From Phaeosaccion multiseriatum (lineage: Eukaryota; Protista; Ochrophyta, other classes): 64,000 nucleotides of DNA. The translations under genes and the position numbers were made by a program. The stretch spans positions 496,001 to 560,000 of the forward strand of contig OZ218960.1 in the NCBI GenBank assembly GCA_965112735.1, read 5' to 3'. Shown piece by piece: positions 698-46,692 of this stretch (position 1 is its first letter; each line of letters begins with the position of its first letter). A model generated the notes under the pieces. That model was given only the letters and a program-made list of their open reading frames with translations. It was not told the origin of the DNA and did not search any database.

Positions 698-3600
698 ATG
701 TCTAACGTTCTAGAGGGACAGCGTAGAATGCTCACGGCCTTCTTCCACGCCACGGGAGGACCCGACTGGTCTAACATCGCAGGATGGAACACGAAAGCAC
801 CAGTAGAAAACTGGGCCGGAGTGACGGTAGAGAATGACTATGTTGTGAAGCTCAATCTGTGGGCGAACCGCCTCAAAGGTGAGAGAGACGTGATTATGGT
901 TGTTCCGCCTGAGGTCCTGAAGAGTATTCTGAAGTATTTCCAGAATGTTCGGAAGTTTTCTCTCTGTTCATGCATCTAGATGTGTTGGGTCTAGAATATT
1001 CGGGAAGGACAATCAAAGCGGGACAAGAGAAGGCACGAGGCGCGGCATGGTGTGGTAGTTCAGCGACCCGTTCGCGTCCCTTTCACTTGATATTAGTGTG
1101 ACCAAAGAACTTTCCTTGCTCCGCAGGGACCATTCCGTTGGAGTTGGGGAAGCTGACAGAGCTTCGAGAACTCCACCTGTCAAAGAACAATCTAGAAGGT
1201 AGGTGGTACGCGTACCTGTTCGCGTCCCATTCACTTGATATTAGTGTGACTCAAGAACTTTCCTCCGCTCCGCAGGGAGCATTCCGAAGGAGTTGGGGAA
1301 GCTTTCAAACCTTCGAGAACTTAAACTGTCATGGAACTCTCTAGAAGGTGAGTGGTACGCGAACCCGTTCGCGTCCCTTTCACTTGATGTAAGTATGGCT
1401 GAAGAACTTTCCTCCGCTCCGCAGGGAACATTCCGCCCGAGCTTGGAAGTCTTGAGAACCTGGCGGTGCTCAACCTGCGGGCCAACGAGCTCACTGGTAA
1501 GTGGTACGCACACCCGTTCGCGTCCCTTTGACTTGATATTAGTGTGACCAAAGAACTTTCCCCCGCTCCATAGGGAGCATTCCAGCTGAGCTTGGAGGTC
1601 TGGAGAAGCTTGAGAAGTTGGGCCTCGCCGACAACAAGCTCACTGGTGAGTGGTACGCACACCCGTCGGCGTCCCTTTCACTTGATTTGAGTATGACCAA
1701 AGAACTGTCCTCCGCTTCGCAGGGAACATTCCACCCGAGCTTAGACGTCTGGGAAATCTTACGGTTTTAAGCCTCTTCTCCAACAAGATCACTGGTGAGT
1801 GGTACGCACACCCGTTCGCGTCCTCTTGACTTGATATTTGTATGACTGAAGAACTATCCTCACATCTCAGGGAGGATTCCGCCGCAATTTGGACAGCTTT
1901 CCAACCTTCGAGAACTTTGGCTCTCCGGGAACCGTCTAGAAGGTGAGTGGTACGCACACCCGTTCGCGTCCCTTTCACCTGATGTTAGTGTGACCAAAGA
2001 TCTTTCCTCCCATCCGCAGGGGACATTCCACCCGAGCTTGGAGGGCTTCAGAACCTTGAGAATCTACACCTCCACAGCAACAAGCTCACTGGTAAGTGGT
2101 ACGCACACCCGTTCGCGTCCCTTTGACTTGATATGAGTATGACCAAAGAACTCCCCTCCGCTCCGCAGAGGGCATTCCAAAGGAGCTTGGAAGTCTGACG
2201 AAGCTTGAGCAATTGTCCCTCTTCCGCAACCAGCTCTCCGGTGAGTGGTACGCACACCCGTTCGCGTCCCTTTGACTTCACTTGATTAGTAGGGTTGAAG
2301 AATTTTCCCCACATCTCAGGGAGCATTCCAGAGGAGCTTGGACAGCTTACGAACCTTCGAGGACTTCGGCTCAACGAGAACAATCTAGATGGTGAGTGGT
2401 ACGCACACCCGTTCGCGTCCCTTTCACTTGATATGAGTATGACCAAAGAACTCTTTTCTCCCACTGCAGGGAGCATTCCACCCGAACTTGGAGGTCTGGA
2501 GAAGCTTGAGGAATGGAACCTCTGCGAGAACAAGCTCAGTGGTAGGTGGTACGCGTACCCGTTCGCGTCCCTTTCACTTGATGTTAGTGTGACCAAAGAA
2601 CTTTCCTTCGCTCCGCAGGGAGCATTCCACCCGAGCTTGGAAGTCTGGAGAAGCTTGAGAAATTGCACCTCTCCCGAAACAAGCTCACTGGTGAGTGGTA
2701 CGCACACCCGTTCGCGTCCCTTTGACTTGATATCAGTATGGCTGAAGAACTTTCCCCGCATCTCAGGGAACATTCCGCCAGAACTAGGACACCTTTCGAA
2801 CCTTCGAGAACTTCAGCTCTACCAGAACAGTCTAGAAGGTAGGTGGTACGCACACCCGTCGGCGTCCCTTTCACTTGATTTGAGTATGACCAAAGAACTT
2901 TCCTTCGCTCCGCAGGGAGCATTCCACCCGAGCTTGGAAGTCTTCGGAACCTGAGGGTGCTCAGCCTCTGGGACAACAAGCTCACTGGTAAGTGGTACGC
3001 ATACCCGTTCGCGTCCCTTTCACTTGATATATGTATGGCTGAAGAACGTTCCCCACATCTCAGGGAATATTCCACCGCAACTAGGACAGCTTTCGAACCT
3101 TCGAGAACTTTGGCTCAACTGGAACAGTCTAGAAGGTAAGTGGTACGCACACCCGTTCGCGTCCCTTTCGCTTGATAGTCGTGTGACAAGAACGTACCTC
3201 CGCTCTGTAGGGAGTATTCCCTTTCACTTGATTGAGTATGACCAAAGAACTCTCCTCCATCTACAGGGAGCATTCCACCCGAGCTTGGACGTCTCGTCAA
3301 GCTCACCCATCTGTTCCTCCATGAAAACCAGCTCTCCGGTGAGTGGTACGCACACCCGTTCGCGTCCCTTTCACTTGATATCAGTGTGACCAAAGAACTT
3401 CCCACCCATCCGCAGGGAGCATTCCAAGAGAGCTTGGACGTCTTCAGAACCTTAAGCGACTGAACCTCAGCAAAAATAACCTCACTGGTGAGTGGTACGC
3501 ACACCCGTTCGCGTCCCTTTGACTTGATGTAAGTATGACCAAAGAACTTTCCTCCGCTCCGCAGGGGAAATTCCGCCCGAGCTTGGAGCTCTGCAGAACC

Positions 3601-6600
3601 TTCAGGATCTGTACCTCTCCAACAATGAGCTCACTGGTGAGTGGTACGCACACCCGTTCGCGTCCCTTTGACTTGATGTTAGTGTGACCAAAGAACTTTC
3701 CTCCGCTCCACAGGGAACATTCCCAAGGAGTTGGGGAAGCTGGCAGAGCTTCGAGGACTTTGGCTCCAAGATAACAATCTAGAAGGTAGGTGGTACGCGA
3801 ACCCCCGCCGCAGCCGCAGCAGTTGGTTGACCCGTTCGCGTCCCTTTCACTTTCTGTTAGTGTGGCCAAAGAACTTTCCTCCACTTCGCAGGGAACACTC
3901 CGCCAGAGCTGGGGCAGCTGATCAACTCAAAGAACTTTCCCCCGCTGCGCAGGCAACACTCCCAAAGAGCTCGGACGTCTCAGCCAGCTGACCGAATTTT
4001 GCCTTCACAGCAACCGGCCTGGTAAGTGGAGCGCATACCCGCTCTTGTCCGCCTCCTTTGGGCTCGTATGTGTATACTGACGCGGGCTCCATTACTGTTT
4101 GAATACGGCAGAGGACGGCACAGCCATGAAGACCTTACGAGAGAGATGGCTTAGTCATGCTGCCCTCGCATCTGCTCCTACTGCGGGCAATTTGACAAGT
4201 GATTCTTCGAGGCAAATTGACGCATTGGACTACAAAACGTATGCAGAGGCGATTTTGTACGGCATTAACCAAGTAGAGGCTCCGATTGCAGTGGGGATTT
4301 ACGGAGAGTGGGGTTGCGGGAAGTCCTTTTTGCTACATGCCATTCGCGAGCAGATATTGCAGCAGCAGAACAAGACGAAGGTTGAGGCAGGAGGGAGTGA
4401 CAAGGGTGCGCAACTACTTGCGCGACGCCTTAAGGGTGCGCGACGCCTCATTGCTTGGCTCGGTCAGTGGTATATGTGGCTGGTGATGGTCTGGTGCTTC
4501 GTGGGGTGGGGGGGCATCAGTGATACAGCCCCATACGGCCACTTCCGCAATGTGCCAGGGATAGTGGACGGAGCCGCTACACAGAGACCGGTCAAGTACA
4601 TCAACGTCGAGTTCAACGCATGTACGTTTACGATTGGCTGTGGGCGATGACTCACTCTCTCCTCCGATGCAATGCCTCCTCTTCTATTCGGCTGTGGCCC
4701 TGATCAGCATCGCGCCCCACCCCGTCTTCCTCCTGTCGTGCTCGCTGACGCTCAGGGCTGTATGCCGGCAGCGATAAGCTCTGGGCAGGCGTGATTCAAG
4801 CAATGTTTAAGGCCGTGGAGGAGCACTCTGACTACGGTGACGAGCTTCGGCTGAGCAGGCTTATCGAGGCGGTGAAGGAGCAGGGCTGGAGGAACTTCGC
4901 TTTCCCGCTGGGCGTGCTCGTAGTGGTAGTGCTGAGCGTACTGACTAGCCTTTCAAAGCTCGATTGGGTAGTGTCGCAACTGAGCGCGGTGTCCGCGGCA
5001 GTGCCTACCCTGCTCGGACTCGTCGGACTGACAGGCGTAGCGCTTCAGACAGGTAAAGTGATTTGTGTTTTATGCGCAAGTCTGAGCGTGTGGTCTCTCT
5101 CTCTACTCTCTCTTAGCTGCCGCCGCTCCCTATTCTCGTTTGCTATGCAGGCGTCTTAGTGTATAGAAATGCCCGGAAGCAAGGCGATATCATCGTTAAA
5201 GAGGCTCAAGACCTTGGAATGGGTGAACAACTCGGTGAGGCAGTATGCTTTGACCTCCGTAAGATTTTTAGCATCAGAGAGGTGCCTCTAACGTCCTTCG
5301 CTCCTGTGTTGTATGTGTCCAGGCTTCATGGCAAGTGTTAGCGATAGGCTTGAATTCCTGTATAAATTCCTAAAGGCCAGTGGCATCAGGCTCTCCGTGG
5401 AGGTGGATGATCTCGACAGGTCAGGAGTCAAGATGGTGTGTTTTTTTCAAGATGTGTGTTTTTATCTCGTGACATGCGTGGGACTTTGGCTTTAAATGTC
5501 CTTCCCCTCTCTGTTGTGCGCTGACTGTTTCAGGTGTGGTGCAAGTCAGGTGATGGCCGTGCTAGAAGCCACTATGCTCCTCCTCTGCAAACACGATGCT
5601 CCCGTGGTTGCCTTCCTCGCGGTCGACCCTCGTGTTGTGGTGACCTCCATCGAGGAGAGTTTTGGCCCTGTCATGCGTGAGGCGGGCATCAGCGGGTCCG
5701 AATACTTGGACAAGATCATCAACTTGCCCTTTTTTCTCCCCGAGGTAGATAAAGAGGCCCAGCGTCTCTTCATGACTGGCCTGCTTTGTGGAAACAATGA
5801 CGACTCAGTCAGGGAGAATCTCAGTGTGCTGGAGTCGTCTGTTTTGAACAGGGAAGGCTACGCATGGGCGAAGTCAAAGGCACCTAAGGAGAGCAGAGAT
5901 GCATCCAAACCGAGGCCGGTGGCTTCCACAGCGTTGAAGCGCGCTCTGTGCAGCTGGGACAAGTGGGATGTCGATGACGTGGAAAGTGGAGGGCCGGGCG
6001 GTGAGGAGGAGGAATGCTGGACAGAATTTGATCGCCTCTTGCCGGCGGTGAACGACGTCACCCCTACTGCAAGCAGTGCTGGCTTGGCTGCCAGAGTGGG
6101 AAAGGACGGACTTGCAGACGTGTGTGTATTTATGAACTGCATGATCATGGCGGGCTTGAAAGCCTGCTCCAAGCCCCAGGAGGCAAAAGGGACAGGAGAA
6201 GAGGCAGCAGACACAGGCGGAGGGGTGGGGTTTGAAGCAACTTCCGGGGGGGGAAGCAGCAACGGCGTGTCGTCAAACGCCGGCAACGACAGCGCGCTGC
6301 CTTCGCCCCATAGGCCCTCCAGCGGCAACGCTGAGGGGGGCGCGGTAAACGAGGGCAACGGCAGCGCGCCGTCTCCACCCGCCGTTAACGGCGACGCTGA
6401 GGGGGGCGCCCCACCGCCGAAGAGAGTGGTTGTAGGAGGAGTTGGAGTGCTGCGGTGCCAATGGGATGAGCTGGAAACCTTCAAGTCCCTCGAGCACTGC
6501 CTGGACAACAACCCGCGGAGGCTTAAACGCATCATCAACATCTTCAACGTGTTGCGAAGGTTGCTTCAGGCCAGGGGCGAGGAGGAATGGCACACCAACC

Positions 6601-7316
6601 CAGTTTTCCGGAAGAAGTTCATTAAATGGGTCATCCTCTGTGAGCAATGGCCGTACCGAACATCTGTGATAGTGACGCTGTTGGATCATCGCATCTTTGA
6701 GGGTGGCTCAGTAAAGCAGCGTAAGCAGAGCGCATGGCTGAAGCCACTCGTGGCTATGGAAGATGACATGAAGGACAACTTCGAGGTGGTGGAGCAGCTC
6801 GCGCACCTCCACCCCAAAGCCGGCAAGCTGCTGCAGATGGACATGGACCCAGAGCGTTTCTGGATGCTCATGCACACCGTGCCCCATCTGACGACCTCCG
6901 ACCTGAAGAGGGGCAGCCCCCTCTTGAGGAACAGTTTCAACCTGAGTCGGTCTGTGCGTGCGCAGGTGGCGACCGGATTCAACGAGCACTTCGTCTTCTC
7001 CGCCGTACAGCATCCGGAGTGCTTGAGAAAGTATGCAGGTGTCGGCCTTCTGAGCTTCCCCAAGGCGAGCGTGGTACAAGATCTTTTGACTTTTGATCAC
7101 CCTGTGTCCTCAGCGGGGGGGGGAGGAGGAACAAGAAGAGGGGGGGAAGGAGGAGAGGAGGATGGGGTTGAGGAGAAGAAACACTCAGAACCTCCCGCGA
7201 AGGAGGAGGATGGGGAGGAGAAGGAGGAACAAGAAGAGGAGGAGGAGGATAACGCCCCACTCAACTGGAGCTTTTTGGTAGAGCATCGAGACTTGATCCC
7301 TCCCTCCATCGTATAG
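698..7316 (+). CDS. LRR-cassette / KAP-family P-loop NTPase (LRRNT cap + ~19 LRR + TM-containing KAP NTPase), multi-exon
   Basis: Exon 1 698-878 encodes an LRRNT cap (LTAFFHATGGPDW..GW..W.GVTV..VVKLNL..NRLKG). 72-nt exons start at 1127,1276,1425,1574,1723,1871,2020,2169,2320,2470,2619,2767,2916,3064,3267,3416,3565,3714, followed by a 69-nt exon 3953-4021, then 4112-4621, 4756-5052, 5151-5234, 5323-5419 and 5534-7316. All are GT-AG and frame-consistent. KAP motifs: SD..DALDYKTYA, Walker A GIYGEWGCGKS, spliced FNAWLY, Walker B spliced DDLDRC, EYLDKII.LPF, NPRRLKRIIN, WVILCEQWPYRTS. Confidence 0.9.
1066..4040 (+). repeat. ~149-bp tandem array: conserved intron + variable 72-nt LRR exon (~21 units including 2 truncated)
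   Basis: Recurrent intron consensus GTRRGTGGTACGCACACCCGTTCGCGTCCCTTTSACTTGAT..AGTRTGACCAAAGAACTTTCCTCCGCTCCGCAG. Exons follow GxIPxELGxLxxLxxLxLxxNxLxG. Confidence 0.95.
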
Positions 7317-8204: not shown

Positions 8205-8796
8205 TCAAGGCCCTCTTCCCGTACTCACCAGCCTTGAACTTCCTCTCCACTCTGTCGAACGTCTCCACGAGGGGGTGGTGCCACCATGTACAGAAGTTTT
8301 GATGTGCTGGGAGAAGTCCAGATCGCCGGTCCAATATGACTTGCTTCTCGTATACATGCGCCCCCACCACATGTCGTTGTCGGACTGACCCAAACTCGCG
8401 CCTACACCTCCATCATGGTGTGCGCCGACTTTCGCCAAGAACCCCCGCGGACAAGAGTCCCTCCATACCAGACCGCCCCCTTTCTCTCTGGCACGAGGAC
8501 TTACCAATAGGGTCAATGGAAAACATGAGATCATAGACGGACTGTGACGAGAAAACCTCTGCCCGAAGTCTGCGGAGCCTCGACAAAAGAATATTGGTAT
8601 CGTCGCCAGATAGCAGAGCGTGTCTCGCATCCCCAAGATCAAGCCCCCGATGACACGCCCATTAGTCTTCACGTCAGCGATAAACTTGTCCATAGACGCT
8701 CCATTGAGTAGAAGAACCTTGGTGACATCAACGTCTTCATTCCTTATGGCGAAGGTGAGCGGTGTGCAGGTGTTGGTGCCCCCTGGCCCTGGACAC
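8205..8796 (-). pseudogene. 3' part of ankyrin-repeat gene disrupted by LTR retrotransposon (true 3' end uncertain)
   Basis: Removing the element plus one ACAC copy restores the frame FVDTPC-PGPGGTNTCTPLTFAIRNEDVDVTKVLLLNGA, which is an ankyrin repeat. Confidence 0.7.
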
Positions 8797-8972
8797 TGTG
8801 GAGTAGGCCACTCTTTCATGCCAAATCGGAAACCCGAGGCAATTGTTTAATATATTCTACTCTCGTTCTATCAATAAGGTTTTGACGTCTTATCTCTCCC
8901 ACCAAGGAGTGGGGAGTCCACAGACAAAGAGTGTGAGTTACAGTTAGTTAGCGCAAGTTCACCGACGCTACT
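8797..8972 (+). repeat. 5' LTR (176 bp)
   Basis: Starts TGTGGAG. Differs from the 3' LTR only at 8939 (T vs C at 14206) and at the last base. Confidence 0.95.
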
Positions 8973-9043: not shown

Positions 9044-12000
9044 ATGGCGGATTCGGCACCAATGGCGCAGTCTGCGGAGAAGCTACATGCGCCACACCTT
9101 ACGCAGGTGGACACCAAGAGCGCGGGTGCGTGGCTGGATAGCCGCAAGTGGTATGAGCAACAGCATAAGGCTCTCGCGAGAAATTTGACACCAGAGCAGG
9201 CCCGGCGCAACCCGGAGGCTACTGTGCAATCGTGCCTAAAGCGCTCGGTAAGAATGCACATCATTAAGGAGATGTTCAGCGATGATGAGAGGACAGCCTT
9301 AACGGCCGACGATGCAGCAACGAGTGCAGCAGTGGAAGCCTCTTTCCTGGCAGCGATTAAACAGCTTGCGGGAAGGACAGCGGAGGCCTCACAGCGCAAC
9401 CCCGTGGAGCTGCAAGATGCTATAAGGAAGAGCCTAGTCATGTCCATGCTGGACAAGGAAGGTAACCACATCGACGTAGAGGAAAGGGTACAGAATCAGC
9501 TCCTTCCCCTGTATGATCTACTCGACAAAAGGGGGTTGGAAGCGGAGTTCATTAACCTCGACACCTACGCGTTCTTACCAACGCATGCCGTTCTGTTGAC
9601 GGAAAGCATTCTGGCCGGCCTAAGGCCCAATGAATTCAAACAGCACGTACAGAGCGCGGCAAGGATGAAGGGCTGGGACCAGCTGAAGAAGAACCCAGAT
9701 GCCTTTAAAAGACTCGTGAAGGAGGAGGCAAAGCTTTTCAGGTCTGCAGACCAGCTGATGGCTAAGCAGGCCAAACAGAAGAAAGACGGCAAGCAAAAGG
9801 AAACCAAGAAGGGTGACCAAAAGAACAATGGCAAGAAGAGCGACGGGAAAGATGGAGGCGGCAAGCAGGGCGGTGGCAAAGGCGACGGCAGTAAGGGAGA
9901 TGGCAAAGCTGAGGGAAATCGTGACGGAAAGAAAGACAAAGACAAGAAACTCACGCATGACCCCAACAAGCCAGGCCCATGTGACCACTGCGGGAGGCCC
10001 AACCACGACAAGGAGCACTGCTGGAAGCTACACCCGGAGCAGAAGCCTGCCAGCCTGTCCCAAGGACACCGGAGAGTTACTTTCGAGGAGGAGCTCACCG
10101 AGGACGCAGCAGCAGACGCAGCGGCGGAGGAAGCAGTCAAGAAGGGAGTGGCAGCAAACCAAGACGCAGGTATGCACCAGCTGTTCCTTAGAGATGATGG
10201 GATGGCGGAGCTCTCTCTCTCGGAGGAGGGACCGGTGGTTAAGATCCCCATCTTGATTGACAGTGGGTCAAGCACCACCAGCCTTAACCTCCCAGCTTTT
10301 CGCCAACTGCGTCACCATTATGGTACCAAGGCCATGGCGCTTGAGCCCATGCCTAGTGCGGTCCAAATGGACACAGCAAATGGCGCAGCAGAGATGACGG
10401 AGATGACTCCTCCACTTACACTGCGTTTCAGCACACCACAGGGGCCTGTCGAGTTGACGGGGCTCCGCCTGGGTTACGAGAGCAGCGATCAGCCTGCTCC
10501 TCTCGTGATCATAGGACGGCAGACAATCAAGGAGCATTTGCCGGACTTGGACCTGAGCAGCCTCAGCAGCAGTGCGGCCAGCGTCCATAACAATCTACAG
10601 CAGCGACGAGCAGCGGTGGTGGAGCAGGTGCCCCTGTCTGAGGACCTGCCCTACATGTTCATGGAGGTGCAAGTGCTGACGGAGGACGAGATCTTGTTTG
10701 ATTCAATTCCCCTCTCTTTCTCTTCCTTCGATCAGGAGGACCACAAGGAGAGAGAGCTGGACAAGCGCTACTCTGATTTGGCCCATGTTTTCGAGAACGC
10801 CAAGGCCAACGGCCTCCCCAGTGACCAGCAACGTAAGTACCACGACTGGTTGTGGTCTCATAAGGATCAGTTTCGTTCTGAACTGATAGACGACCCTCCG
10901 GCTGAGGTGGAGCCGATGAAGCCTCGCTGGAAGCAGAATTTTGTGTGCCCCAAAATCCCCTTTCGTCGCATGAAGCCTAACATGAGGGAGTGGCTTGGAG
11001 CTTTCCTGTGCTTGCTGGCAACTTTTGGCCTTGTGTACAAGAACGCTCAGGCTTGCGCAGCATCACCAGCGCTCGTCACCCCTAAGGCTTCGGGAAGCTT
11101 TCGTGCTACTGTGGACTACCGAGTGGTCAACGAAGGACTCCACCCACAGCACTGGCCCATGGAGACCATCATTCCCCAGCTGCAGCAGATACTGTCCAAG
11201 GCGAGGCGCCTTGCAGTAGCAGACATGAACAAGGGCTATTGGCAATTCCCTGTTGACAAGGCAAGTCAGGAGATGTTCACCATCGCCACCCCGGACGGCC
11301 TTTTCACCCCGACGCGAGTCCCTCAAGGCCTGAGCATCAGCGTCGAGTACTACCAGAGCACCATGCAGACAATCCTCGGAGATCTTTTCGGTAAATGTTG
11401 TGTGGTGTGGCTCGATGATGTGCTGATTTGGGGCGAGGACGATGATGACTTGCTGAACAATTTGACTTTGGTTTTCGATCGATTCGAGAAGGCCAAGCTT
11501 TTTTGCAGCGCACCCAAGTTTGTACTGTATGCTTTGGAACAGACTTACTGCGGTGTGACTTGTGGAGAAAATGGCGTGGGGCAGGACCCTGCACGCCTTC
11601 AGGGGCTGGTGGATTTGGCTGCCCCCACAGACGGAGGGCAATTGATGCAGTTCCTTGCCTCTCTCAACTGGTACCGCAGCCACCTCCCAGACCTCGCTCG
11701 TGTCTCTCTCCCTCTCCAGCAGCTTCTCAATCAGACTCTGGACGGACTGGAGGTGCGCAGCTAAGCACGGGCTGCGAAGCGGCCCATCACAGCAGAGGCG
11801 TGGACGCCCGAGTGTGCAGCGGCGTTTGCAGCGACGAAGGAGCTCTTGTGCTCTGCGGTCACGCTCACGACTCTGAAGGAGGGCTACGCCGTGTGCCTGT
11901 ACACAGATGCATCGCATTTTGGGTGGGGCACCATGATCACGACTTTCCCCAAGGAGCTGTACTCCCCCGGCAAGTCTTTGGGGGACATCCCTCATGAGCC

Positions 12001-13936
12001 ACTGGCCTTTGGCAGTGGCCTTTTCAGCGGCAGTCAGCTCAACTGGCCTACATTGGACAAGGAAGGGTATCCAGTGGTACAAGCATTTCTGCGGTATGAT
12101 TACCTCCTCTGGGGCCCTGACGTTATTGTCAATACGGACCACGCCAACGTGTGCTACATTTTTTATCCGAAGCAGCATGTTACGGCCCTCAGCAAGGCTA
12201 CTGCACAGCGCCTTCAAGGCTGGGCAGTCATCCTCGGCCAATTTCGGTTTCTTTTGCAGCACCTCCCGGGCGAGAAGAATGTGTGGGGAGACATGATCTC
12301 CCGCTTTCTCGCATTGCCTCCAGTGGCAATGCGGCAGCGACACACTCTCTCCCTCCCTCCCCCCCCTCCCCCTGCGTGTCCCACTCTCGTGTCCCTTGAT
12401 GCTCTCAGGTTAAGCCAACAGGAGCATGCCCCACTCTCTCAAAAGGGGGAAGGGGTAGATGGGACTGACAAGATTGTGGAGCCCGTTTCAGATATTGCTC
12501 TCGTGTGGCATGCAGATATGGAGCTCTACAAGACAGCAGCGGGAGAGGTGTGGGTTCCGGCAGCGGACAAGCAGCTTCAGCTACGGTTGTGTACAGAGGC
12601 GCACGCAGGAGGAGCATGCCATAGGCTCAAGACAGCAACCATGGAGCAGCTGCGTTTGATACATTGGCACGGCAAGGCAGATGACGTCAGCGCTTTCATC
12701 AAGCACTGCCTTCACTGCGTGGACTCTAGGGCAGGTGACAAGATACCCCGCCCCCTTGGTGAGACCCTCCACGGCAGCAAGCCTGGAGAGGTGCATCACA
12801 TGGACTGGCTCAGCATTGGAGAGTCGGACTCTGAGTTTGACAAGGGTATGAACAAATACCTCTTTGTGCAGATGGACGACCTCAGCGGCCTTTGCCTACT
12901 CACGGCTCACCCGAGTGTGCACGCTAATCTGGCAGCACGCGACCTTCTTCTGTTTGCCTCTCAGCATGGCATGCCGAGTATATGGGTGAGTGATCAGCCT
13001 ACTCACTTCAAGAATCAGCTCTTGCGGGAGATGGCGGACATTTATAAGGTGAATCATCACTTTTCAGTCGCTAACGTAGCGCACAGCAACGGCACGGTGG
13101 AGCAGCTAATGCGGCAGATCATTGTGGCTTTTCGAGCAGTTCTCTCTGAGCACAAGCTCCCGCCGACGGAGTGGGAGTCAGTCTTGCCCTTGGTCATGTA
13201 TGGTCTCAACTCAGCAGTGCGCAAGCGGACTGGCTTGTCTCCATTGGAGATCATCACAGGGCGGAAACCAGAGGCATTGCTTTCAGCGGAGCTTATCAAG
13301 CTTGGAGAGCAGTGGCACGTCGAGCCCATCAGCACGGAGAAGCTTCAAGCCATCTTGGCTGATACGCGGCAAGCTTTGGACCAGATGCACAAGACGGTGG
13401 CAGGCTCTCGTCAGACGCAGCGAGCTGCGGGGCGTAAGTCAGCCTCCAAGGGCAAGTTGCCCAACTTCATGGTCGGAGAGTTTGTTCTGGCAGCTCGTGT
13501 ACGCAAGAAAGGACGCATGCACAAGCTCACGGCCACCTGGCGCGGGCCCTACAGAGTGCTTGATGCCTCTCATGCCCACGTCTACCTCATTCAGCACCTC
13601 CTCAGCGGCGAGCGGCTTACGGTACATGCCGAGCGGCTCATGTTCTACCACGACGCCACTTTGGACATCACGACGGAGCTGAAGACCCACATCGAGTCGT
13701 CGGATAACCTGGCAAGGTATCAGATTGACTCCTTCGTTTCGCTTCGCAAGGAGCAAGGCGAGTATGAGGTGTTCGTTCACTGGCTTGGCTTTGAAGCCGA
13801 TGAGCGCACCTGGGAGCCTCTTCATCAGCTTATGGAAGACATGACTGTTGCTACCCTGCAGCGGTTTCTCCGACAGATGAAGCTCTCGACAGCGGTCAAG
13901 CGTGACCTGCTGCACATGCACAAGCTGCGTGTGTGA
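9044..13936 (+). pseudogene. gag-pol polyprotein with one in-frame TAA at 11762-11764
   Basis: ORFs 9044-11764 and 11846-13936 share a frame. Motifs: CCHC knuckle CDHCGRPNHDKEHC, protease LIDSGS, RT VDYR/DMNKGYWQ/WLDD, RNase H YTDAS, integrase H..H..CLHC, MDW/SDQ/NGTVE, WRGPY, chromodomain YEVFVHWLGFEADERTWEP. Confidence 0.92.
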
Positions 13937-14053
13937 ATGTTTTGTGTGAAGTTTTTTTCCTTTCAAAAGGTTTTTCTCAATTTGGCTACTCACTCGTTTT
14001 GTTCCTCCTTCTTTTCCCTTTAGCTCAACAGGATAGTTTCCTATCAAGCTTCT

Positions 14054-14062
14054 AAGGGGGGA
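14054..14062 (+). other. polypurine tract of the retrotransposon
   Basis: AAGGGGGGA located 1 nt upstream of the 3' LTR. Confidence 0.8.
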
Positions 14063-14063
14063 C

Positions 14064-14239
14064 TGTGGAGTAGGCCACTCTTTCATGCCAAATCGGAAAC
14101 CCGAGGCAATTGTTTAATATATTCTACTCTCGTTCTATCAATAAGGTTTTGACGTCTTATCTCTCCCACCAAGGAGTGGGGAGTCCACAGACAAAGAGTG
14201 TGAGTCACAGTTAGTTAGCGCAAGTTCACCGACGCTACA
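14064..14239 (+). repeat. 3' LTR (176 bp)
   Basis: TG...CA termini, followed by the ACAC TSD. Confidence 0.95.
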
Positions 14240-14868: not shown

Positions 14869-17680
<2,812 letters not shown>

Positions 17681-18838
17681 GCAAGCAGGACGGGTTGGCC
17701 CCATGGTAGTGGCGATGGCGGGGGAGGGGGAGGGGGGAGGGGGGAGGGCGGGTTGAAAGCCTTTTGAGAAAGTACACACTACGCACCACCACACGACATG
17801 GTACACGATACGTGACGTCACGTGAAAATAAAGTTAACTTTTAAAAAAAAGAAGTTAATGCACGCTACACGTTCGGAGAAAGGCATCGGGTGAAGTAGTC
17901 ATGGTAATCATAGCCCTCATCAAGCGCCTCTCTGTGGCTCATCCCCTCTCTCTCTCTCTGCCCACTGCCGAAATTGAGTTCCACACCGCGTCTCCGAGGT
18001 GCGCTCTGGAGCGTCTCGGCGTAGAGCTTCAAAGCTGACGTCAGACAGCTACCCACTTGCTCAAGAAGAGCAGGCACCCTCGAGAATGGTGTCGCCTCCA
18101 GCCAGGAGTAGCAATAATGAATAATGAAGTTTCCAGCCAGGAGTAGTTTCCCTCAGCGATTGGGAAGAGGCATGCTCTCTCTTCATCGCCTTGTCTTGAA
18201 GCATAAGCTGGAGGAGGAGGAGGAGGAGGGGGACAATGTCCATGTCCATCTCGTACTCTACGGCGCCCTCCACATCCTCGCAAGAAAGCATGGTCCGGGT
18301 GTGTGAGGCACGAGCCAGGCCCATAGCTAGTTAGCTATAACTTAGCTAGCTAAACTTCACCCGAGGCTTCGGGGAGTAACTCCGATGGGGAAGGCCTCGT
18401 TGCAGCCACTCCAGCCATCACGAAGGTCGACGCAAGGAGGGGAGGAAGGAAAGAAGGGGCGGAGTGTCCGCCGCGGCTAAGAAGAAGAAGGAGCGATTTT
18501 TTTTTTGCCGTGGTTTTGTCATGTCCTGTCATTTGTTTTATAGGTATACACAGCAAACACAGTGCTGCACAGTAAAATAGAAATATATCATAGTCAAAAG
18601 CCCCATCAATGCCCCAATCACATTTGGTACGGATGCATCGAGTTTCCCAACCAACCATTCGTCAGTCAGTCAGTCCTGTCCCTCGCCCTCTCCCCTGAGC
18701 CTTGCCTGCCACCCCCCCCACAGTCAACCCCTGCCCCCCCCCCTCCCCTCGGCTCCTTGGCTGGTAGTGATGGTGTGTGATGGATTACTAAAGGGGCGGG
18801 CGATAAAAAAGGCGCCGCGCCCCTCTTGTCTCTCTCTC

Positions 18839-19347: not shown

Positions 19348-22689
<3,342 letters not shown>

Positions 22690-27971: not shown

Positions 27972-32563
<4,592 letters not shown>

Positions 32564-39598: not shown

Positions 39599-42500
39599 CA
39601 GTGGTAGCAACGGTGGCCGCCGCCCCGCAAGGAAGGGAGGGACACGACGTTACAGACTCGGGCTCTGACGTTTCTGATTTGGAGAATGCCATGGAGGACA
39701 GGGGAAGGTCAGGCACAGACACAAGCCCCATCATCCCCTTTCAGTGTATACTGGTCTCCTTCCTTCCCTCTCTGCACTAGTGCCGTACCCCGAGCCTGAT
39801 CCTGAGCCTGAGCCTGAGCCTGATCCTGAGCCTAATCCTGAGCCTGATCCTGAGCCTGATCCTGAGCCTGATCCTGAGCCTGATCCTGAGCCTGATCCTG
39901 AGCCCGGGACCCACTGACGTCGCCACTCACCCTCAGCCCTGATCATGGCCCTGAACCTACCGCCCTACCCAACCCGGACACTGCTTAACTCTGTCCCTCA
40001 CCCCTCCCCTTGGCCCTGCTTGTCCCTGACCCCGTCGCTGCTGCTCAGTCTGCTCATTCGAGCGAGCATGGGCGAGAGCCTGCGCGGGCGGCGCATTAGC
40101 AATTACACGCTGCGCGAGACGGGAGAGGCCCTCAATCTGGACCTCAGACTGAAAGACTTTGACGACGTTGCGTACCTCGCTCAGGGGGTGAGTAGAGACT
40201 TAGAGGCGTATGGGAGAGAGAGAGAGGGGGGGGGGGGGCGAAGTGGTAGTAGTAGGGGCAGCTGCCTCGTCTTGTCCATCCAAAGGAAGGCCATGAAAGA
40301 AAGGCTGCCTCGTCTTGTCCATCCAAAGGAAGGCCATGAAAGAAAGGCTCTCACCTGTCCATCCAAAGGAAGGCCATGAAAGAAAGAAAAGCTCTCACCG
40401 CGGTGCAACTCTCTCCCCCTCTCTCTGCGCTCCTCCGTGTGTGTGCGCGCGTGCATGTGTGTGTGTGTGTGTGTGTGTGCGTGTGTGTGTGTGTGCGTGT
40501 GTGTTTGTGTGTGTATGTGTATGTGTGTGCGTGTGTGTGTGTGTGTGTGCGTGCGTGCGCCCTCCCCAGGCCATGTGTGCGGTGTACTCGTGCTGCCTCA
40601 AGGGCCGCCCCGTGGTATTTAAGACGCCCCTTCCCGAGTCCAACAACCTCGACATGGCGAGCAACGATCTCGAGGTCGAGATGCTCATGCTGCAGCAGGT
40701 ACGTGTAGTATGTCATTGGGTGGGTGCGTGCGTGGATGGACCAACCCCCCTGGGGAGGGGGAGGGCGGCGGTGGACATGGAGGGGGGGGTGGGGGGGGTA
40801 TGGTCGAAGTGATGTAAGCCGAGGCCTGACTTGTGCTGCCTGTACACCCTCAAATGTCCTCATGCGCTCCCTGATGCCTTCCCTCATTCCCTTCTCCTGT
40901 CCTCCTTATACCCTCCCTCCCTCCCTCCCTCCCTCCCTCCCTTACTCACTCACTCACTCACTCACTCACTCACTCACTCACTCACTCACTCACTCACTCA
41001 CTCAACTCCCTCCCTCCCTCCCTCCCCTCAGCTGCGGCATGAGAACATTGTTGCTATTCGTGGGGCAGGCATTCTGTCGGATATGCGGCGCTTCATCGCT
41101 TTGGACTTTGTGTCCTTCGGGACCCTCAGCGATCTCCTCAGAGGGCCCAAGTCAGTGCAGCTGGAGGTGAGGGACTGAGTGAGTTGAGTGAGTGAGTGAG
41201 TGAGTGAGTTGAGTGAGTGAGTGAGTGAGGGCCTAAGTCAGTGCAGCTGGAGGTGAGGGAGGGACGGAGTTGGGTGAGTGGGTGGGGGAGGGAGGGAGCG
41301 AGGGTGTGAGTGAGTGAGTGAGGGAGGGAGGGAGGGAGGGAGTGAATGGGTGAGTGAGTGAGTGAGGGAGGGAGTGAATGGGTGAGTGAGTGAGTGAGTG
41401 AGTGAGGGAGGGAGGGAGGGAGGGAGTGAATGGGTGAGTGAGTGAGTGAGGGAGGGAGTGAATGGGTGAGTGAGTGAGTGAGTGAGTGAGGGAGGGAGGG
41501 AGGGAGGGAGTGAATGAGTGAGTGAGTGAGTGAGGGAGTGAGGGAGGGAGTGAATGGGTGAGTGAGTTAGTTGAGTGAGTGAATAAATTTGAGCTCCCTT
41601 CCGTGGAACTCGAACTTTAGTAGTGCGAGTCCCCGCCTAAAGACGAAGAGCGCAGGACCCTGCCTCCTCCCTCATTGATCGGTATCTTCTGCCGCTTTCC
41701 CCTGCCATCATCATCTTCTGCTGCCCTCCACTGCCCTCTACCTCCCTATTCTACAGATGGCGCAGGTGCTAAAGTTGGCTCTGCAAGTTTGTAACGCTCT
41801 TCAGTACCTGCACGACTTTGCCGTACCGGGCTGCATGCTCCTTCACAGGGACCTCAAGCCCGACAACATCGGCATCACCTTAGAAGGAACCGTCAAGCTG
41901 CTGGACTTTGGTCTTGGCAAGGTAGGGAGGGGCAGGGGGGGATGGCAGTGGAGGGGGCCCTCGTGTTGTTAACGGCTGACTCTCGACCGCCCTACCCGAG
42001 TAATTGTGCTACCTACCTCCTGCCTTCCTTATGTACCTTTCCAGCTACCTACCTCCTGCCTTCCTTATGTACCTTTCCAGCTACCTACCTGCCCACTGTG
42101 CTCTACGCTGACCTGACCTCTCCCCCTCTTCCTACCTACCTACCTACCATCCTACCTACCTACCCACCTACCTACCTACCCACCTACCTACCTACCTACC
42201 TACTTACCTACCTACCTACCTACCTACCTACCTACCTACCTACCCACCTACCTACCTACCTACCTACCTACCTACCTACCTACCTACCTACCTACCCACC
42301 TACCTACCTACCCACCTACCTACCTACCTACCTACCTACCTTCCTTTCCGCCCCCTCTCCCTCGCTCGCTCCCCTCCACCCCCCCCCACCTCTCAGCTCA
42401 TCTCCCGCAAGTACCGCACCAAAACGGCTTCTTACGTATTGACGGGCGGCACAGGCTCTCTGCGCTACATGGCCCCCGAGGTAGCCCTGCACAAGGTGTA

Positions 42501-45237: not shown

Positions 45238-46692
45238 ATGGCGGGCGCTAAGCGCAGCAGCAGCAAAGGCGAGCCACAGAGACGCGCGTGCGACTTCTGC
45301 AGGAGGCAGAAGCGTGGCTGCGACCACAAGGTTCAGTGTGGCCAGTGTAAGAAGCGCGGCATCACCTGCACGTACTCATTCAGGCGCCCCGAAGATGAAG
45401 GGCAATCCCAAGCCCCAGCCCCTGCGTCTGTCATCGCCGAGCCTCTCAAGGTGACAAAGAAGAAGCCCATAGTGAGCCCCGTACCCAAGTCTCAGCTGCC
45501 CGTCGGGGGCGTGCGCTTCACCTCGGCAGCAAGGCCCAAGAAGCGGCCACTGGTCTCCGACGTGGAGGACTCTATCGAGGAGGGGGAGGAGGACTGGGTA
45601 CCCAACGGCACCACCAGCAGCAGTGCCGCCCCAAGCCGACCCAAGCGATCTCGGCGCAGGAGCGTAAGAGTACCATCGACCCCCATCAGAGATGACGAGT
45701 CGTCATCCTCCTCGGAGGCGGAGCAAGATAGGGACACAGGCAGGTCGGGGGAAGGAGAAGGAGAGCAACAAGAGGCAGGATGGGGCGGCCAACGGCCGAG
45801 TCGGCTCGCAGACGTCCTCGATGATGAGAGTCTCAACAGCAGCATGACTGTGCTCCCCCCGCCCGTGAGGAGGAGGGGCAGCAGTAGCTGCAGCAGCAGC
45901 ACCACCAGCAACATCGTCATCCCCCCCTCCACAGCCCGCCCCCCCATGGCGGTGCTGATCCCGCCCAACACGGCGCACGACTTCAACCCACCCACCGCGC
46001 CGGAGGGGGGCTGGGGAGGCACGGGGGCCGGGGAGTTGGGAACGGGCTGGGGAAGGACGCCGCTGGGTGAGTTGCGTAGGGATGGCAACCCGCCGCCCGT
46101 CGGGAGTCCCACACGCAAGGGGCGCAAGGTCGGTCTGATGGCCAAGAACACGGCAGGCAGCAGCAGCAGCAGCAGCGGCAGCATCGGAAGCACAAGTGTT
46201 GGAAACGGCCATTTGTTCGCACCCTCCTATCCCGCCTTATCGGACGCGGCGCTGGAGGCGTTGGTCATGTGGGTGCCCCCTGTGGAGGGCGGTATGCAGA
46301 GGAGCACGAGTACCAGCAGCAGCAGCAGCAGCAGCGTGAGCAGTGCAGGGGGAGGAGGAGGAGGAGGAGGAGGAGGAGGAGGAGGAGGAGGAAGGTCCTT
46401 CCCTTCGGTGACGTCTTGGGCGAACTACAACGGAGTCAGCACGGGCAGCAACGCCGGTAGCCTGCACGCGGGCATTCCAGGCCGGGGCATGTCCATCGGA
46501 GGTGACGGTGGGGGCAGCGGGGCAGACGCAATGCTCAGCCTGGGAAGCGCTGGCTCCTGCCTTCCGCCCCCCATCCCTACCCCAAGAGGAGGCCTGCCCA
46601 TCACGAGGCAGAACTCTCTGGCCGAGGCGGTGGGCAAGCTGGACGAGGATTTACACTCCTCTATGGACGACTCGGTGCTGGACCTGTTCTAG
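45238..46692 (+). CDS. Zn(II)2Cys6 binuclear-cluster transcription factor, intronless
   Basis: ACDFCRRQKRGCDHKVQCGQCKKRGITCTYS at the N-terminus of a 484-aa ORF. Confidence 0.88.
   Translation: MAGAKRSSSKGEPQRRACDFCRRQKRGCDHKVQCGQCKKRGITCTYSFRRPEDEGQSQAPAPASVIAEPLKVTKKKPIVSPVPKSQLPVGGVRFTSAARPKKRPLVSDVEDSIEEGEEDWVPNGTTSSSAAPSRPKRSRRRSVRVPSTPIRDDESSSSSEAEQDRDTGRSGEGEGEQQEAGWGGQRPSRLADVLDDESLNSSMTVLPPPVRRRGSSSCSSSTTSNIVIPPSTARPPMAVLIPPNTAHDFNPPTAPEGGWGGTGAGELGTGWGRTPLGELRRDGNPPPVGSPTRKGRKVGLMAKNTAGSSSSSSGSIGSTSVGNGHLFAPSYPALSDAALEALVMWVPPVEGGMQRSTSTSSSSSSSVSSAGGGGGGGGGGGGGGGRSFPSVTSWANYNGVSTGSNAGSLHAGIPGRGMSIGGDGGGSGADAMLSLGSAGSCLPPPIPTPRGGLPITRQNSLAEAVGKLDEDLHSSMDDSVLDLF

What the first reader, a model, noticed from the sequence alone, without database searches (positions are those of the whole stretch)
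1357..1374. Conserved intronic dyad ACGCGAAC-CC-GTTCGCGT marks array boundaries: possible recombination site
Seen: every array intron carries an imperfect dyad (ACGCACAC-CC-GTTCGCGT), perfect at 1357-1374. In the first intron, clear homology begins at the dyad centre (ACCCGTTCGCG at 1066). In the last intron it decays just after ACCCG (~4040). So the duplicated unit appears to run from dyad centre to dyad centre. Inference: a site for a site-specific recombinase or nuclease, or a splicing-control element.
Basis: partly seen in the sequence, partly recalled or inferred. Interest (0 to 1): 0.75.

Follow-up and report, generated by a model that had tools for sequence, protein, structure and literature searches.

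The report
Repeated intron motif in LRR array
The 18-base "dyad" is the middle of a nearly invariant 41-base stretch at the start of an intron that was copied 18 times with its leucine-rich-repeat exon in a brown-alga-type receptor-like gene; the array's edges do fall on it, but I found no evidence that it is a dedicated recombination or splicing signal.

Summary
A 149-bp unit (72-nt LRR exon plus ~77-nt intron) is repeated 18 times (1127-3785), and every intron carries the motif at intron positions 10-27. It is perfect only at 1357. Array homology starts at 1061-1066 and stops at about 4041, both on ACCCG.

The interpretation mostly does not hold.
- The two edges must share a repeat phase in any tandem duplication, so they are one event: an exchange at an ACCCG microhomology that fused two different introns.
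- The consensus is 6/8 complementary and no more palindromic than shuffled sequence (P=0.16).
- There are no compensatory changes and no unusual RNA stability.
- Shared segments between units mostly begin and end inside exons. Two internal deletions have junctions away from the dyad.
- A comparable Ectocarpus array lacks the motif.

Something real remains. Intron positions 1-41 differ by K~0.09 between units, against dS~0.8 in the flanking exons. Linkage between neighbouring exons collapses across this block. A 29-nt insertion sits exactly at the dyad centre.

Best reading: an ordinary "type I" LRR exon-shuffling array, here fused to a KAP NTPase, whose intron 5' block is kept uniform by concerted evolution and/or splicing constraint. 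A programmed recombination site is unlikely (about 5%).

The parts
698..878 (+). Exon 0: start codon and N-terminal LRR cap (60 aa plus 1 nt), followed by a phase-1 intron
   Evidence: ORF and translation. The frame continues into the LRR exons.
879..1126 (+). First intron. Positions 879-1065 are unique. Positions 1066-1126 equal positions 16-77 of the array intron (58/60 identical). This is the left edge of the array.
   Evidence: Semi-global alignment. Upstream similarity is at chance level.
1127..3785 (+). Tandem array: 18 regular 72-nt 'type I' LRR exons (G.IP.ELG.L..L..L.L..N.L.), each followed by a 76-79-nt phase-1 intron. The period is 149 bp, with 297- and 446-bp higher-order periodicity.
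   Evidence: TRF, exon and intron tables, LRR pattern scan.
1357..1374 (.). The only perfect copy of the dyad, ACGCGAAC-CC-GTTCGCGT (intron positions 10-27 of unit 1)
1348..1383 (.). Larger 36-nt quasi-palindrome of which the dyad is the core. It starts at the first base of the 5' splice site (GTGAGTGGTACGCGAAC / GTTCGCGTCCCTTTCAC; 17-nt arms, 82% complementary in this unit, 12/17 in the consensus by my count).
   Evidence: the repeat finder, RNA fold, pair counts.
1506..1523 (.). Example of the consensus form ACGCACACCCGTTCGCGT (6/8). The same 18-mer occurs at 1804, 1952, 2101, 2250, 2401, 2700, 3145, 3348, 3497 and 3646. Variants occur at 1208 and 2551 (GT, which makes the palindrome GGTACGCGTACC), 2997 (AT), and 1655 and 2848 (right arm GTCGGCGT).
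3136..3266 (+). Composite 131-nt intron: a full intron copy (3136-3210), a 10-nt dead exon stump (3211-3220), then the 3' part of an intron from about position 31. The deletion junction is not at the dyad.
   Evidence: Sequence reading.
3786..3952 (+). Composite 167-nt intron. The left arm ACGCGAAC is intact. A 29-nt insertion (25-nt filler at 3805-3829 plus a second ACCC) sits exactly at the dyad centre. A truncated dead exon (3892 to about 3926) is fused to intron position ~53.
3953..4021 (+). Last, divergent LRR exon (69 nt, GNTPKELGRLSQLTEFCLHSNRP)
4022..4111 (+). Last intron. Positions 4022-4041 equal intron positions 1-20 (4 differences from the consensus). The rest is unrelated. This is the right edge of the array.
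4112..7316 (+). KAP-family P-loop NTPase part of the same gene. Exons lie at about 4112-4621, 4756-5051 and 5151-5237, then small exons, then 5496-7316. The Walker A motif GEWGCGKS and hydrophobic helices lie inside the domain. Exon borders are approximate.
   Evidence: Pfam PF07693 on two exons searched separately by reference. Frame continuity.

Best explanation
The 18-mer has no demonstrable function of its own. It is the centre of a 41-nt block at the 5' end of a 77-nt intron. That intron was amplified together with its 72-nt LRR exon into an 18-unit tandem array. The gene encodes an N-terminal LRR domain fused to a KAP P-loop NTPase and has the 'type I LRR exon' architecture described for brown-algal candidate immune receptors.

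Shown:
- The unit structure, and the edges of homology on ACCCG.
- The lack of excess symmetry, covariation or RNA stability.
- The scattered boundaries of segments shared between units.
- The strong excess conservation of intron positions 1-41.

Inferred:
- The array was founded by an unequal exchange between the intron upstream and the intron downstream of an ancestral LRR exon, at a shared ACCCG.
- Every array intron is therefore a chimera: positions 1-20 come from the downstream intron and positions 16-77 from the upstream intron.
- The weak dyad was produced by that fusion.
- The block has since been kept uniform by concerted evolution, meaning short-tract gene conversion or unequal exchange favoured in the longest run of identity. 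Purifying selection on sequence next to the 5' splice site probably adds to this.
- The exons meanwhile diverge, with diversifying selection the likely cause.
For: - Unit anatomy and reading frame.
- The type-I exon consensus and shuffling are described in PMC3341825 and PMC11378527.
- The edges are sharp, and flanking similarity is at chance level.
- By eye, the flanks are only 3/8 (first intron) and 2/8 (last intron) self-complementary, so the dyad exists only in the chimera.
- The consensus palindrome is not above shuffles (P=0.16).
- There are 0 compensatory pairs, and the three pairs that vary are mostly unpaired.
- RNA folding z-scores are -1.0 to +0.9 for consensus-type units. There is no Rfam match.
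- Divergence falls into three tiers: intron positions 1-41 K=0.09, positions 45-78 K=0.31, exon synonymous sites dS~0.81. Third codon positions 1-7 nt before the splice site are only 0.40-0.50 identical.
- The two terminal units are the two most divergent in the block (6 differences each against 0-4 elsewhere). This is the classic edge effect of concerted evolution and is not expected under pure site-by-site constraint.
- Association between sites drops to about 0 across intron positions 1-48 and recovers from position 49 into the downstream exon.
Against: - Two independent junctions fall on the same 4-5 nt: the founding junction and the ACCC-flanked 29-nt insertion at 3805-3833. By my rough post-hoc estimate this has about a 1-2% chance, so the dyad centre may be unusually breakable.
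- Concerted evolution alone does not explain why the 5' 41 nt are three times better conserved than the 3' 33 nt, or why conservation jumps abruptly at the exon border. Some function or bias of the block is implied but not identified.
- No same-genome paralogous array or orthologous array could be obtained, so conversion and selection cannot be separated.
Confidence: 0.55

Rival explanations
1. Fragile quasi-palindrome. The 36-nt inverted repeat, especially in its perfect GA form, transiently forms hairpins during replication. Breakage or template switching at its tip seeds unequal exchange and gene conversion. This makes the intron 5' block the preferred crossover zone for LRR exon shuffling. 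No dedicated enzyme is needed.
For: - The founding junction and the 29-nt filler insertion with a 4-nt ACCC duplication both lie at the dyad centre.
- Units 3 and 11 share sequence from intron position 22 into the next exon, but differ at positions 3-4 and in the upstream exon. This places one breakpoint between positions 4 and 22.
- Linkage between neighbouring exons collapses across the block.
- The perfect form is significantly palindromic (P=0.001).
- LRR introns of Ectocarpus sp. 13 carry a different, strong palindrome, and several duplication or inversion alignment ends fall inside it.
Against: - 13 of 18 units have the 6/8 form with two central mismatches and a 2-nt spacer, which makes a poor hairpin.
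- Most boundaries of shared segments are inside exons.
- Two deletions have junctions elsewhere.
- Site 34 is linked to the upstream exon across the centre.
- The known fragile palindromes I recall from general knowledge are much longer.
Confidence: 0.2
2. RNA-level splicing element. The block from the 5' splice site to the likely branch region (CACTTGAT) binds a splicing factor, or forms a weak hairpin that masks GUGAG. It would secure or modulate correct pairing of 18 equivalent splice sites and so control in-frame exon skipping.
For: - Strong conservation runs exactly from intron position 1 to 41, with an abrupt onset at the splice site.
- Minimum-free-energy folds of 4 of 6 units pair positions 1-5 with 32-36 and 10-13 with 24-27.
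- Alternative splicing of LRR exons is reported for brown-algal ROCO genes (PMC11378527).
Against: - There is no thermodynamic excess for consensus-type units.
- The consensus structure is only -7.4 kcal/mol with 0 compensatory changes.
- Pair 3:34 is broken in 9 of 13 distinct sequences.
- The Ectocarpus array uses unrelated introns, so no shared trans-factor site is evident.
- The edge effect fits homogenisation better than constraint.
Confidence: 0.17
3. Target of a site-specific recombinase or nuclease. This would be a loxP/FRT-like or RSS-like site (two inverted arms around a short spacer) used for programmed germline or somatic rearrangement of LRR cassettes.
For: - The size and layout (36 bp, arms around a CC/ACCCG core) resemble recombinase sites.
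- One copy sits in every unit.
- The edges and one insertion lie at the core.
Against: - The arms are imperfect and vary without compensation.
- The flanks hold half-sites only. That fits illegitimate fusion, not integration into a pre-existing full site.
- Shared-segment boundaries and deletion junctions lie elsewhere.
- There are no inverted LRR exons in the window.
- The only recombination-type gene found in the 64-kb window is the integrase of a Ty3/gypsy element. ORFs below 220 aa beyond 14 kb were not screened.
- The motif is absent from the one comparable array, and the metagenome and viral scans gave only one chance match each.
- Published work reports no somatic recombinants and no recombinase (PMC11378527).
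Confidence: 0.05
4. Remnant of a small mobile element (a MITE-like or introner-like hairpin) that supplied the intron's 5' end.
For: The inverted repeat starts exactly at the intron's first base.
Against: - All copies lie in the array at one phase, and there are no dispersed copies in the 64-kb window.
- The intron has no terminal inverted repeats or target-site duplication.
- The 72-nt exon layout and the position of the split codon are the same in the Ectocarpus sp. 13 array.
Confidence: 0.03

Closest known systems
Type I LRR exon arrays of brown-algal ROCO and other LRR genes (Zambounis et al. 2012, PMC3341825; PMC11378527)
   Same: - Exon of 72 nt and 24 aa, with the consensus GxxPxxLxxxxxLxxLxLxxNxL.
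- All introns are in one phase.
- Dead exon remnants sit inside introns.
- Repeat number is variable and the exons diverge rapidly.
   Different: - The partner domain is a KAP P-loop NTPase, not Roc-COR or NB-ARC.
- Introns are minimal (77 nt) and nearly uniform, instead of long and heterogeneous as in Ectocarpus sp. 13 (locus L002).
- No LRR exons lie on the opposite strand.
- The intron motif has not been described in those papers: a text search for palindrome, hairpin, inverted repeat and recombination signal found nothing (palindrome also absent).
Tetrahymena 90-bp LRR exon arrays (PMC6564038)
   Same: - Each LRR is one fixed-length exon.
- Introns are in phase.
- Expansion is attributed to unequal crossing-over of exon plus intron units.
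   Different: - The lineage, exon length and intron phase differ.
- The arrays are associated with a LINE-like element.
- No palindromic intron motif is reported; the word occurs in that paper only in the CRISPR expansion.
Homogenised introns flanking diversified exons in multigene families such as MHC genes
   Same: Introns are kept alike by recombination or conversion while adjacent exons, including their synonymous sites, stay divergent under diversifying selection.
   Different: - Here the copies are tandem units within one gene.
- The homogenised stretch is only about 41 nt, with a very abrupt border.
loxP/FRT-type recombinase sites and V(D)J recombination signal sequences
   Same: A short site with two inverted arms around a spacer lies between cassettes that encode a binding domain.
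   Different: - The arms are imperfect and not co-varying.
- There is no cognate enzyme.
- Junctions are not confined to the spacer.
- The flanks carry half-sites only.
KAP family P-loop NTPases (Pfam PF07693; the Kidins220/ARMS architecture of repeats plus a KAP domain is from general knowledge)
   Same: - The P-loop domain has inserted hydrophobic helices.
- An N-terminal repeat domain is present.
- Relatives found here carry Ank+TPR, TIR, Roc-COR, trypsin, amidase or nSTAND modules.
   Different: - The N-terminal module here is a plant-type LRR array.
- The closest relative found (P0122, 43% identity) has Ank+TPR instead.

Membership tests
Type I LRR exon array (brown-algal exon-shuffling loci) | Each LRR is encoded by one 72-nt exon with the consensus GxxPxxLxxxxxLxxLxLxxNxLx | tested here: met
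   18 exons of exactly 72 nt; translations; definition in PMC3341825.
Type I LRR exon array (brown-algal exon-shuffling loci) | All intervening introns are in the same phase, so exons can be added or removed in frame | tested here: met
   Every exon starts with 2 nt and ends with 1 nt of the Gly codon. The frame runs on into the KAP exons.
Type I LRR exon array (brown-algal exon-shuffling loci) | Inactivated LRR exons in introns, and/or LRR exons on the non-coding strand | tested here: inconclusive
   Two truncated dead exons are present (3211-3220; 3892 to about 3926). No LRR exon lies on the minus strand anywhere in the window.
Site-specific recombination site (loxP/FRT/RSS-like) | Inverted arms conserved as a symmetric pair | tested here: not met
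   The consensus is 6/8 (core) and 12/17 (extended). Best-palindrome score P=0.16 against shuffles. The variable positions 14, 15, 22, 23 and 34 lie in the arms and are uncompensated.
Site-specific recombination site (loxP/FRT/RSS-like) | Rearrangement junctions confined to the spacer | tested here: not met
   The founding junction and one insertion are at ACCC(G). Two deletions and most shared-segment boundaries lie elsewhere.
Site-specific recombination site (loxP/FRT/RSS-like) | A cognate recombinase or nuclease | not testable with these tools
   Only a retrotransposon integrase is seen in the window. The rest of the genome is not available.
Regulatory RNA hairpin at a 5' splice site | Stability above the composition-matched expectation | tested here: not met
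   z = -1.0, -0.7, -0.3, +0.1 and +0.9 for five units. Only the perfect unit reaches -2.4.
Regulatory RNA hairpin at a 5' splice site | Base pairs maintained by compensatory change | tested here: not met
   0 of 15 pairs and 0 of 9 pairs show a change on both sides. Nine pairs never vary and so are uninformative.
Introner / MITE-like mobile element | Dispersed copies with terminal inverted repeats and target-site duplications | tested here: not met
   All copies are in the array at one phase. The metagenome and viral scans returned only chance bacterial and phage matches.
KAP family P-loop NTPase | Match to PF07693 above the gathering score | tested here: met
   38.2 and 47.0 bits against a cut-off of 20, on two exons searched separately.

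The most novel reading that the evidence does not exclude
The 36-nt quasi-palindrome at the start of every intron is a programmed break or exchange site. The cell would use it to delete, duplicate or reorder LRR cassettes in the germline or in somatic cells. That would make it the missing recombination signal for the 'adaptive immunity in brown algae' idea. The unrelated strong palindromes in Ectocarpus LRR introns would be its functional counterparts.
Probability: 0.05. Interest if true: 0.9.

Novelty: new member of a known kind. Interest (0 to 1): 0.33.

Why it matters
If the main reading is right, this is one more exon-shuffling LRR array of the kind known since 2012. It is notable mainly for its KAP-NTPase partner and for unusually small, uniform introns.

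The useful residue is quantitative. A 41-nt intron block is about nine times less diverged than the synonymous sites of the exons it separates. Linkage between neighbouring exons is lost across it. This makes the locus a compact test case for how introns serve as the scaffold for exon shuffling, and for separating gene conversion from splicing constraint.

If breaks really do cluster at ACCCG, the long-standing speculation about programmed LRR rearrangement in brown algae would become directly testable.

Tried and rejected
- Same-genome paralogous arrays could not be reached.
  - A word search with a read-through ORF of the array returned generic, mostly unnamed LRR proteins plus one Ectocarpus protein. 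The named ones were mostly bacterial.
  - A word search with that Ectocarpus protein again gave mostly unnamed metagenome LRR proteins.
  - Exact look-ups of window ORFs found nothing.
- Pattern scans of public collections gave only chance hits.
  - The metagenome scan with the intron's right half returned one bacterial contig.
  - Two viral-contig scans returned one high-GC phage-like coding region and nothing else.
- Orthologues of the KAP part were sought by word search and by the full HMMER search.
  - The Scytosiphon homologue has no LRR exons.
  - The best hit, P0122, is Ank-TPR-KAP.
  - Eight other long hits carry TIR, Roc-COR, trypsin, amidase and other modules.
  - No LRR-KAP orthologue was found.
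- Rfam gave no match.
- Homology between the window's block and the Ectocarpus intron palindromes was rejected. Only a 9-mer is shared, and about one such match is expected by chance (my estimate).
- The mirtron and small-RNA idea was rejected. The intron ends do not pair and the hairpin is only about 36 nt.
- The idea that the intron block is conserved because it is coding was considered only by inspection and not formally tested. Retaining one intron shifts the frame.
- The spliced protein model was not joined or searched as one sequence.
- The contig is not human. It looks like brown-algal nuclear DNA, but the species could not be named.
Full report
WHAT IS THERE

The window is eukaryotic nuclear DNA: 58% G+C, many microsatellites and spliceosomal introns. 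It is not human. The nearest named relatives of its proteins are brown algae (Scytosiphon, Ectocarpus).

On the + strand a gene starts at 698 with a 60-aa LRR N-terminal cap (exon 0, 698-878). It continues through 18 regular exons of exactly 72 nt (1127-3785) and one divergent 69-nt exon (3953-4021). Each encodes one plant-type LRR, G.IP.ELG.L..L..L.L..N.L..

The frame then runs into exons of a KAP-family P-loop NTPase. Pfam PF07693 scores 38 and 47 bits against a cut-off of 20, with Walker A motif GEWGCGKS and hydrophobic helices inside the domain.

I searched the exons one by one by reference. I did not build or search the joined spliced protein.

Every regular exon is followed by a 76-79-nt intron in the same phase, giving the 149-bp period found by TRF. 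Weaker 297- and 446-bp higher-order periods are also present. This is the 'type I LRR exon' architecture described for Ectocarpus ROCO and other LRR loci (PMC3341825, PMC11378527). Here it is fused to a KAP NTPase.

CHECKING THE OBSERVATION

The 18-mer is present in all 18 array introns at intron positions 10-27.
- 15 copies have at most 3 mismatches.
- Two more have 4 mismatches, with right arm GTCGGCGT.
- One is split by an insertion.
- Only 1357-1374 is perfect. Eleven copies read ACGCACACCCGTTCGCGT, which is 6/8 complementary.

- The last 61 nt of the first intron (1066-1126) match the consensus at 58/60.
- The first 20 nt of the last intron (4022-4041) differ from the consensus at 4 positions.
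- Beyond both points similarity is at chance level (P=0.12-0.15 on the left, 0.40-0.64 on the right).

HOW MUCH IS BEYOND CHANCE

The copy number is a trivial result of tandem duplication.

The symmetry is not remarkable. The best palindrome in the consensus intron scores 5.5, against 4.55+/-0.92 in dinucleotide shuffles (P=0.16). Only the unit-1 variant stands out (P=0.001).

That variant differs from the consensus at positions 14-15, the two most variable sites of the region: AC in 13 units, GT in 2, GA in 2, AT in 1. The GT variant creates a different palindrome, GGTACGCGTACC.

The dyad is the core of a longer 36-nt quasi-palindrome that begins at the first base of the intron (GTGAGTGGTACGC..GCGTCCCTTTCAC).

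The dyad is not better conserved than its surroundings. The whole of positions 1-41 is 90-92% identical between units.

THE EDGES

In any tandem duplication the array begins and ends at the same repeat phase. The agreement of the two edges is therefore one observation, not two.

Both flanks contain ACCCG. Left of it the first intron is unique. Right of it the last intron is unique.

The simplest history is an unequal exchange at this 5-nt microhomology, between the intron upstream and the intron downstream of an ancestral LRR exon. Every array intron is then a chimera: positions 1-20 from the downstream intron and positions 16-77 from the upstream intron.

Read by eye, neither flank is self-complementary (3/8 and 2/8). 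The dyad therefore exists only in the chimera and looks like a product of the junction, not its cause.

TESTS OF THE RECOMBINATION-SITE IDEA

1. Internal rearrangements. Two deletions left dead exon stumps (3211-3220; 3892 to about 3926). Their junctions join exon position 10 to intron position ~30, and exon position ~35 to intron position ~53. Neither is at the dyad.

2. Segments shared above background between non-adjacent units. Of 16 segments, most begin and end inside exons, for example u5/u13 E23-E53 and u9/u11 I52-E26 at 100% identity. Only one boundary falls near the dyad: the u3/u11 segment starts between intron positions 4 and 22.

3. Site-to-site association.
   - Association is about 0.75-0.9 z-units within exons.
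   - It drops to about 0 at the exon/intron border and stays there over intron positions 1-48.
   - It recovers from position 49 into the downstream exon.
   - So the upstream exon is uncoupled from [intron 3' third + downstream exon]. The uncoupling zone is the whole block, not a point.
   - Site 34 (C/G) is linked to the upstream exon type and to sites 14-15, across the dyad centre.

4. In favour of the idea: a 29-nt insertion (25-nt filler unique in the window, plus a second ACCC) sits exactly at the dyad centre of the last regular unit (3805-3833). So two of four visible independent rearrangements lie on the same 4-5 nt. My rough post-hoc estimate of the chance is 1-2%.

5. A type-I LRR array of Ectocarpus sp. 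13 (locus L002) has the same 72-nt exons but long, heterogeneous introns without this motif. Their similarity tracks that of the exons.

TESTS OF THE RNA IDEA

Minimum-free-energy folds often pair intron positions 1-5 with 32-36 and 10-13 with 24-27, which would mask the 5' splice site. However:
- z-scores for consensus-type units are -1.0 to +0.9.
- The RNAalifold consensus is -7.4 kcal/mol.
- No pair shows a compensatory change.
- The three pairs that vary (3:34, 14:23, 15:22) are mostly unpaired.
- Rfam has no match.

WHAT IS UNUSUAL

Mean pairwise divergence falls into three tiers:
- K=0.09 for intron positions 1-41;
- K=0.31 for positions 45-78;
- pS=0.50 (dS~0.81) at exon synonymous sites.

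Third codon positions 1-7 nt upstream of the splice site are only 0.40-0.50 identical, so conservation switches on abruptly at the first intron base. The introns are uniform across anciently diverged exon types (...LE...LT...LS).

Either the block is homogenised or it is constrained. The two terminal units are the two most divergent in the block (6 differences each against 0-4). The chance that the two extremes are the two ends is 1/153. This is the classic edge effect of concerted evolution. I therefore favour homogenisation by short-tract conversion or unequal exchange within the longest run of identity, stopped by heterology at the exon border. Splicing constraint probably adds to it. These two causes cannot be separated without orthologous or paralogous arrays, which I could not obtain.

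COMPARISON WITH WHAT IS KNOWN

The locus meets the defining features of type-I LRR exon arrays, except that it has no opposite-strand exons. It does not meet the tested features of a recombinase site, a regulatory hairpin or a mobile element (see the membership table).

KAP NTPase relatives show swapped N-terminal modules: Ank+TPR in the closest (P0122, 43% identity), and TIR, Roc-COR, trypsin, amidase and nSTAND in others. This fits a receptor-like modular family.

Neither brown-alga paper mentions a palindrome in these introns, and PMC3341825 also has no mention of a hairpin, inverted repeat or recombination signal. PMC11378527 states that no somatic recombinants or recombinases have been reported.

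VERDICT

This is a real, correctly described motif in an otherwise ordinary member of a known class of exon-shuffling LRR arrays. The dyad as such is most likely a junction by-product riding in a homogenised or constrained intron block. A programmed recombination site is not excluded, but I put it at about 5%.

Noticed in passing
L002:15300-19900 (Ectocarpus sp. 13, GCA_964200085.2 CAXNAK020000739.1): The long introns of this type-I LRR array, which has exons on both strands, carry a strong palindrome GTCCCGCC-N8-GGCGGGAC. The best copy is at 15902-15942 with 19-nt arms. There are five copies, all inside the LRR region, and none in the window. Several ends of inverted or direct self-alignments (15911, 15489, 17785-17789) fall inside these palindromes.
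   Followed up: partly
window:8205-14086: A chromovirus-type Ty3/gypsy retrotransposon lies directly downstream of the LRR-KAP gene. ORFs at 9044-11764 and 11846-13936 hit RVT_1, RNase H, integrase and a weak chromodomain. Similar minus-strand ORF starts at 8205-8819 and 13439-14086 suggest its LTRs.
   Followed up: partly
window:1127-3785: Exon-internal mosaicism. Patches of 19-56 nt at 95-100% identity, including synonymous sites, are shared between non-adjacent LRR exons, for example the GQLSNLREL-coding patch in units 1, 5, 11 and 13. This suggests short-tract conversion inside exons.
   Followed up: partly
window:4112-7316: The partner domain is a KAP P-loop NTPase with hydrophobic helices inside the domain and a long low-complexity C-terminal exon. 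The closest relative found has Ank+TPR repeats instead of LRRs. Other relatives carry TIR, Roc-COR, trypsin or amidase modules.
   Followed up: partly
window:20380-21108, 41163-41582, 56121-56358 and many others: The window is very rich in simple and short-period tandem repeats. One example is a 65-nt unit repeated 11 times at 95% identity at 20380-21108. TRF reports 187 rows in 64 kb.
   Followed up: no
window:26766-27710(-), 51746-52657(-), 45238-46689(+), 28379-31279(+): Other gene fragments: CIAPIN1/anamorsin-like, mRNA cap N7-methyltransferase-like, a Zn2Cys6 cluster domain, and a C2HC zinc finger. These are Pfam hits on single ORFs.
   Followed up: no
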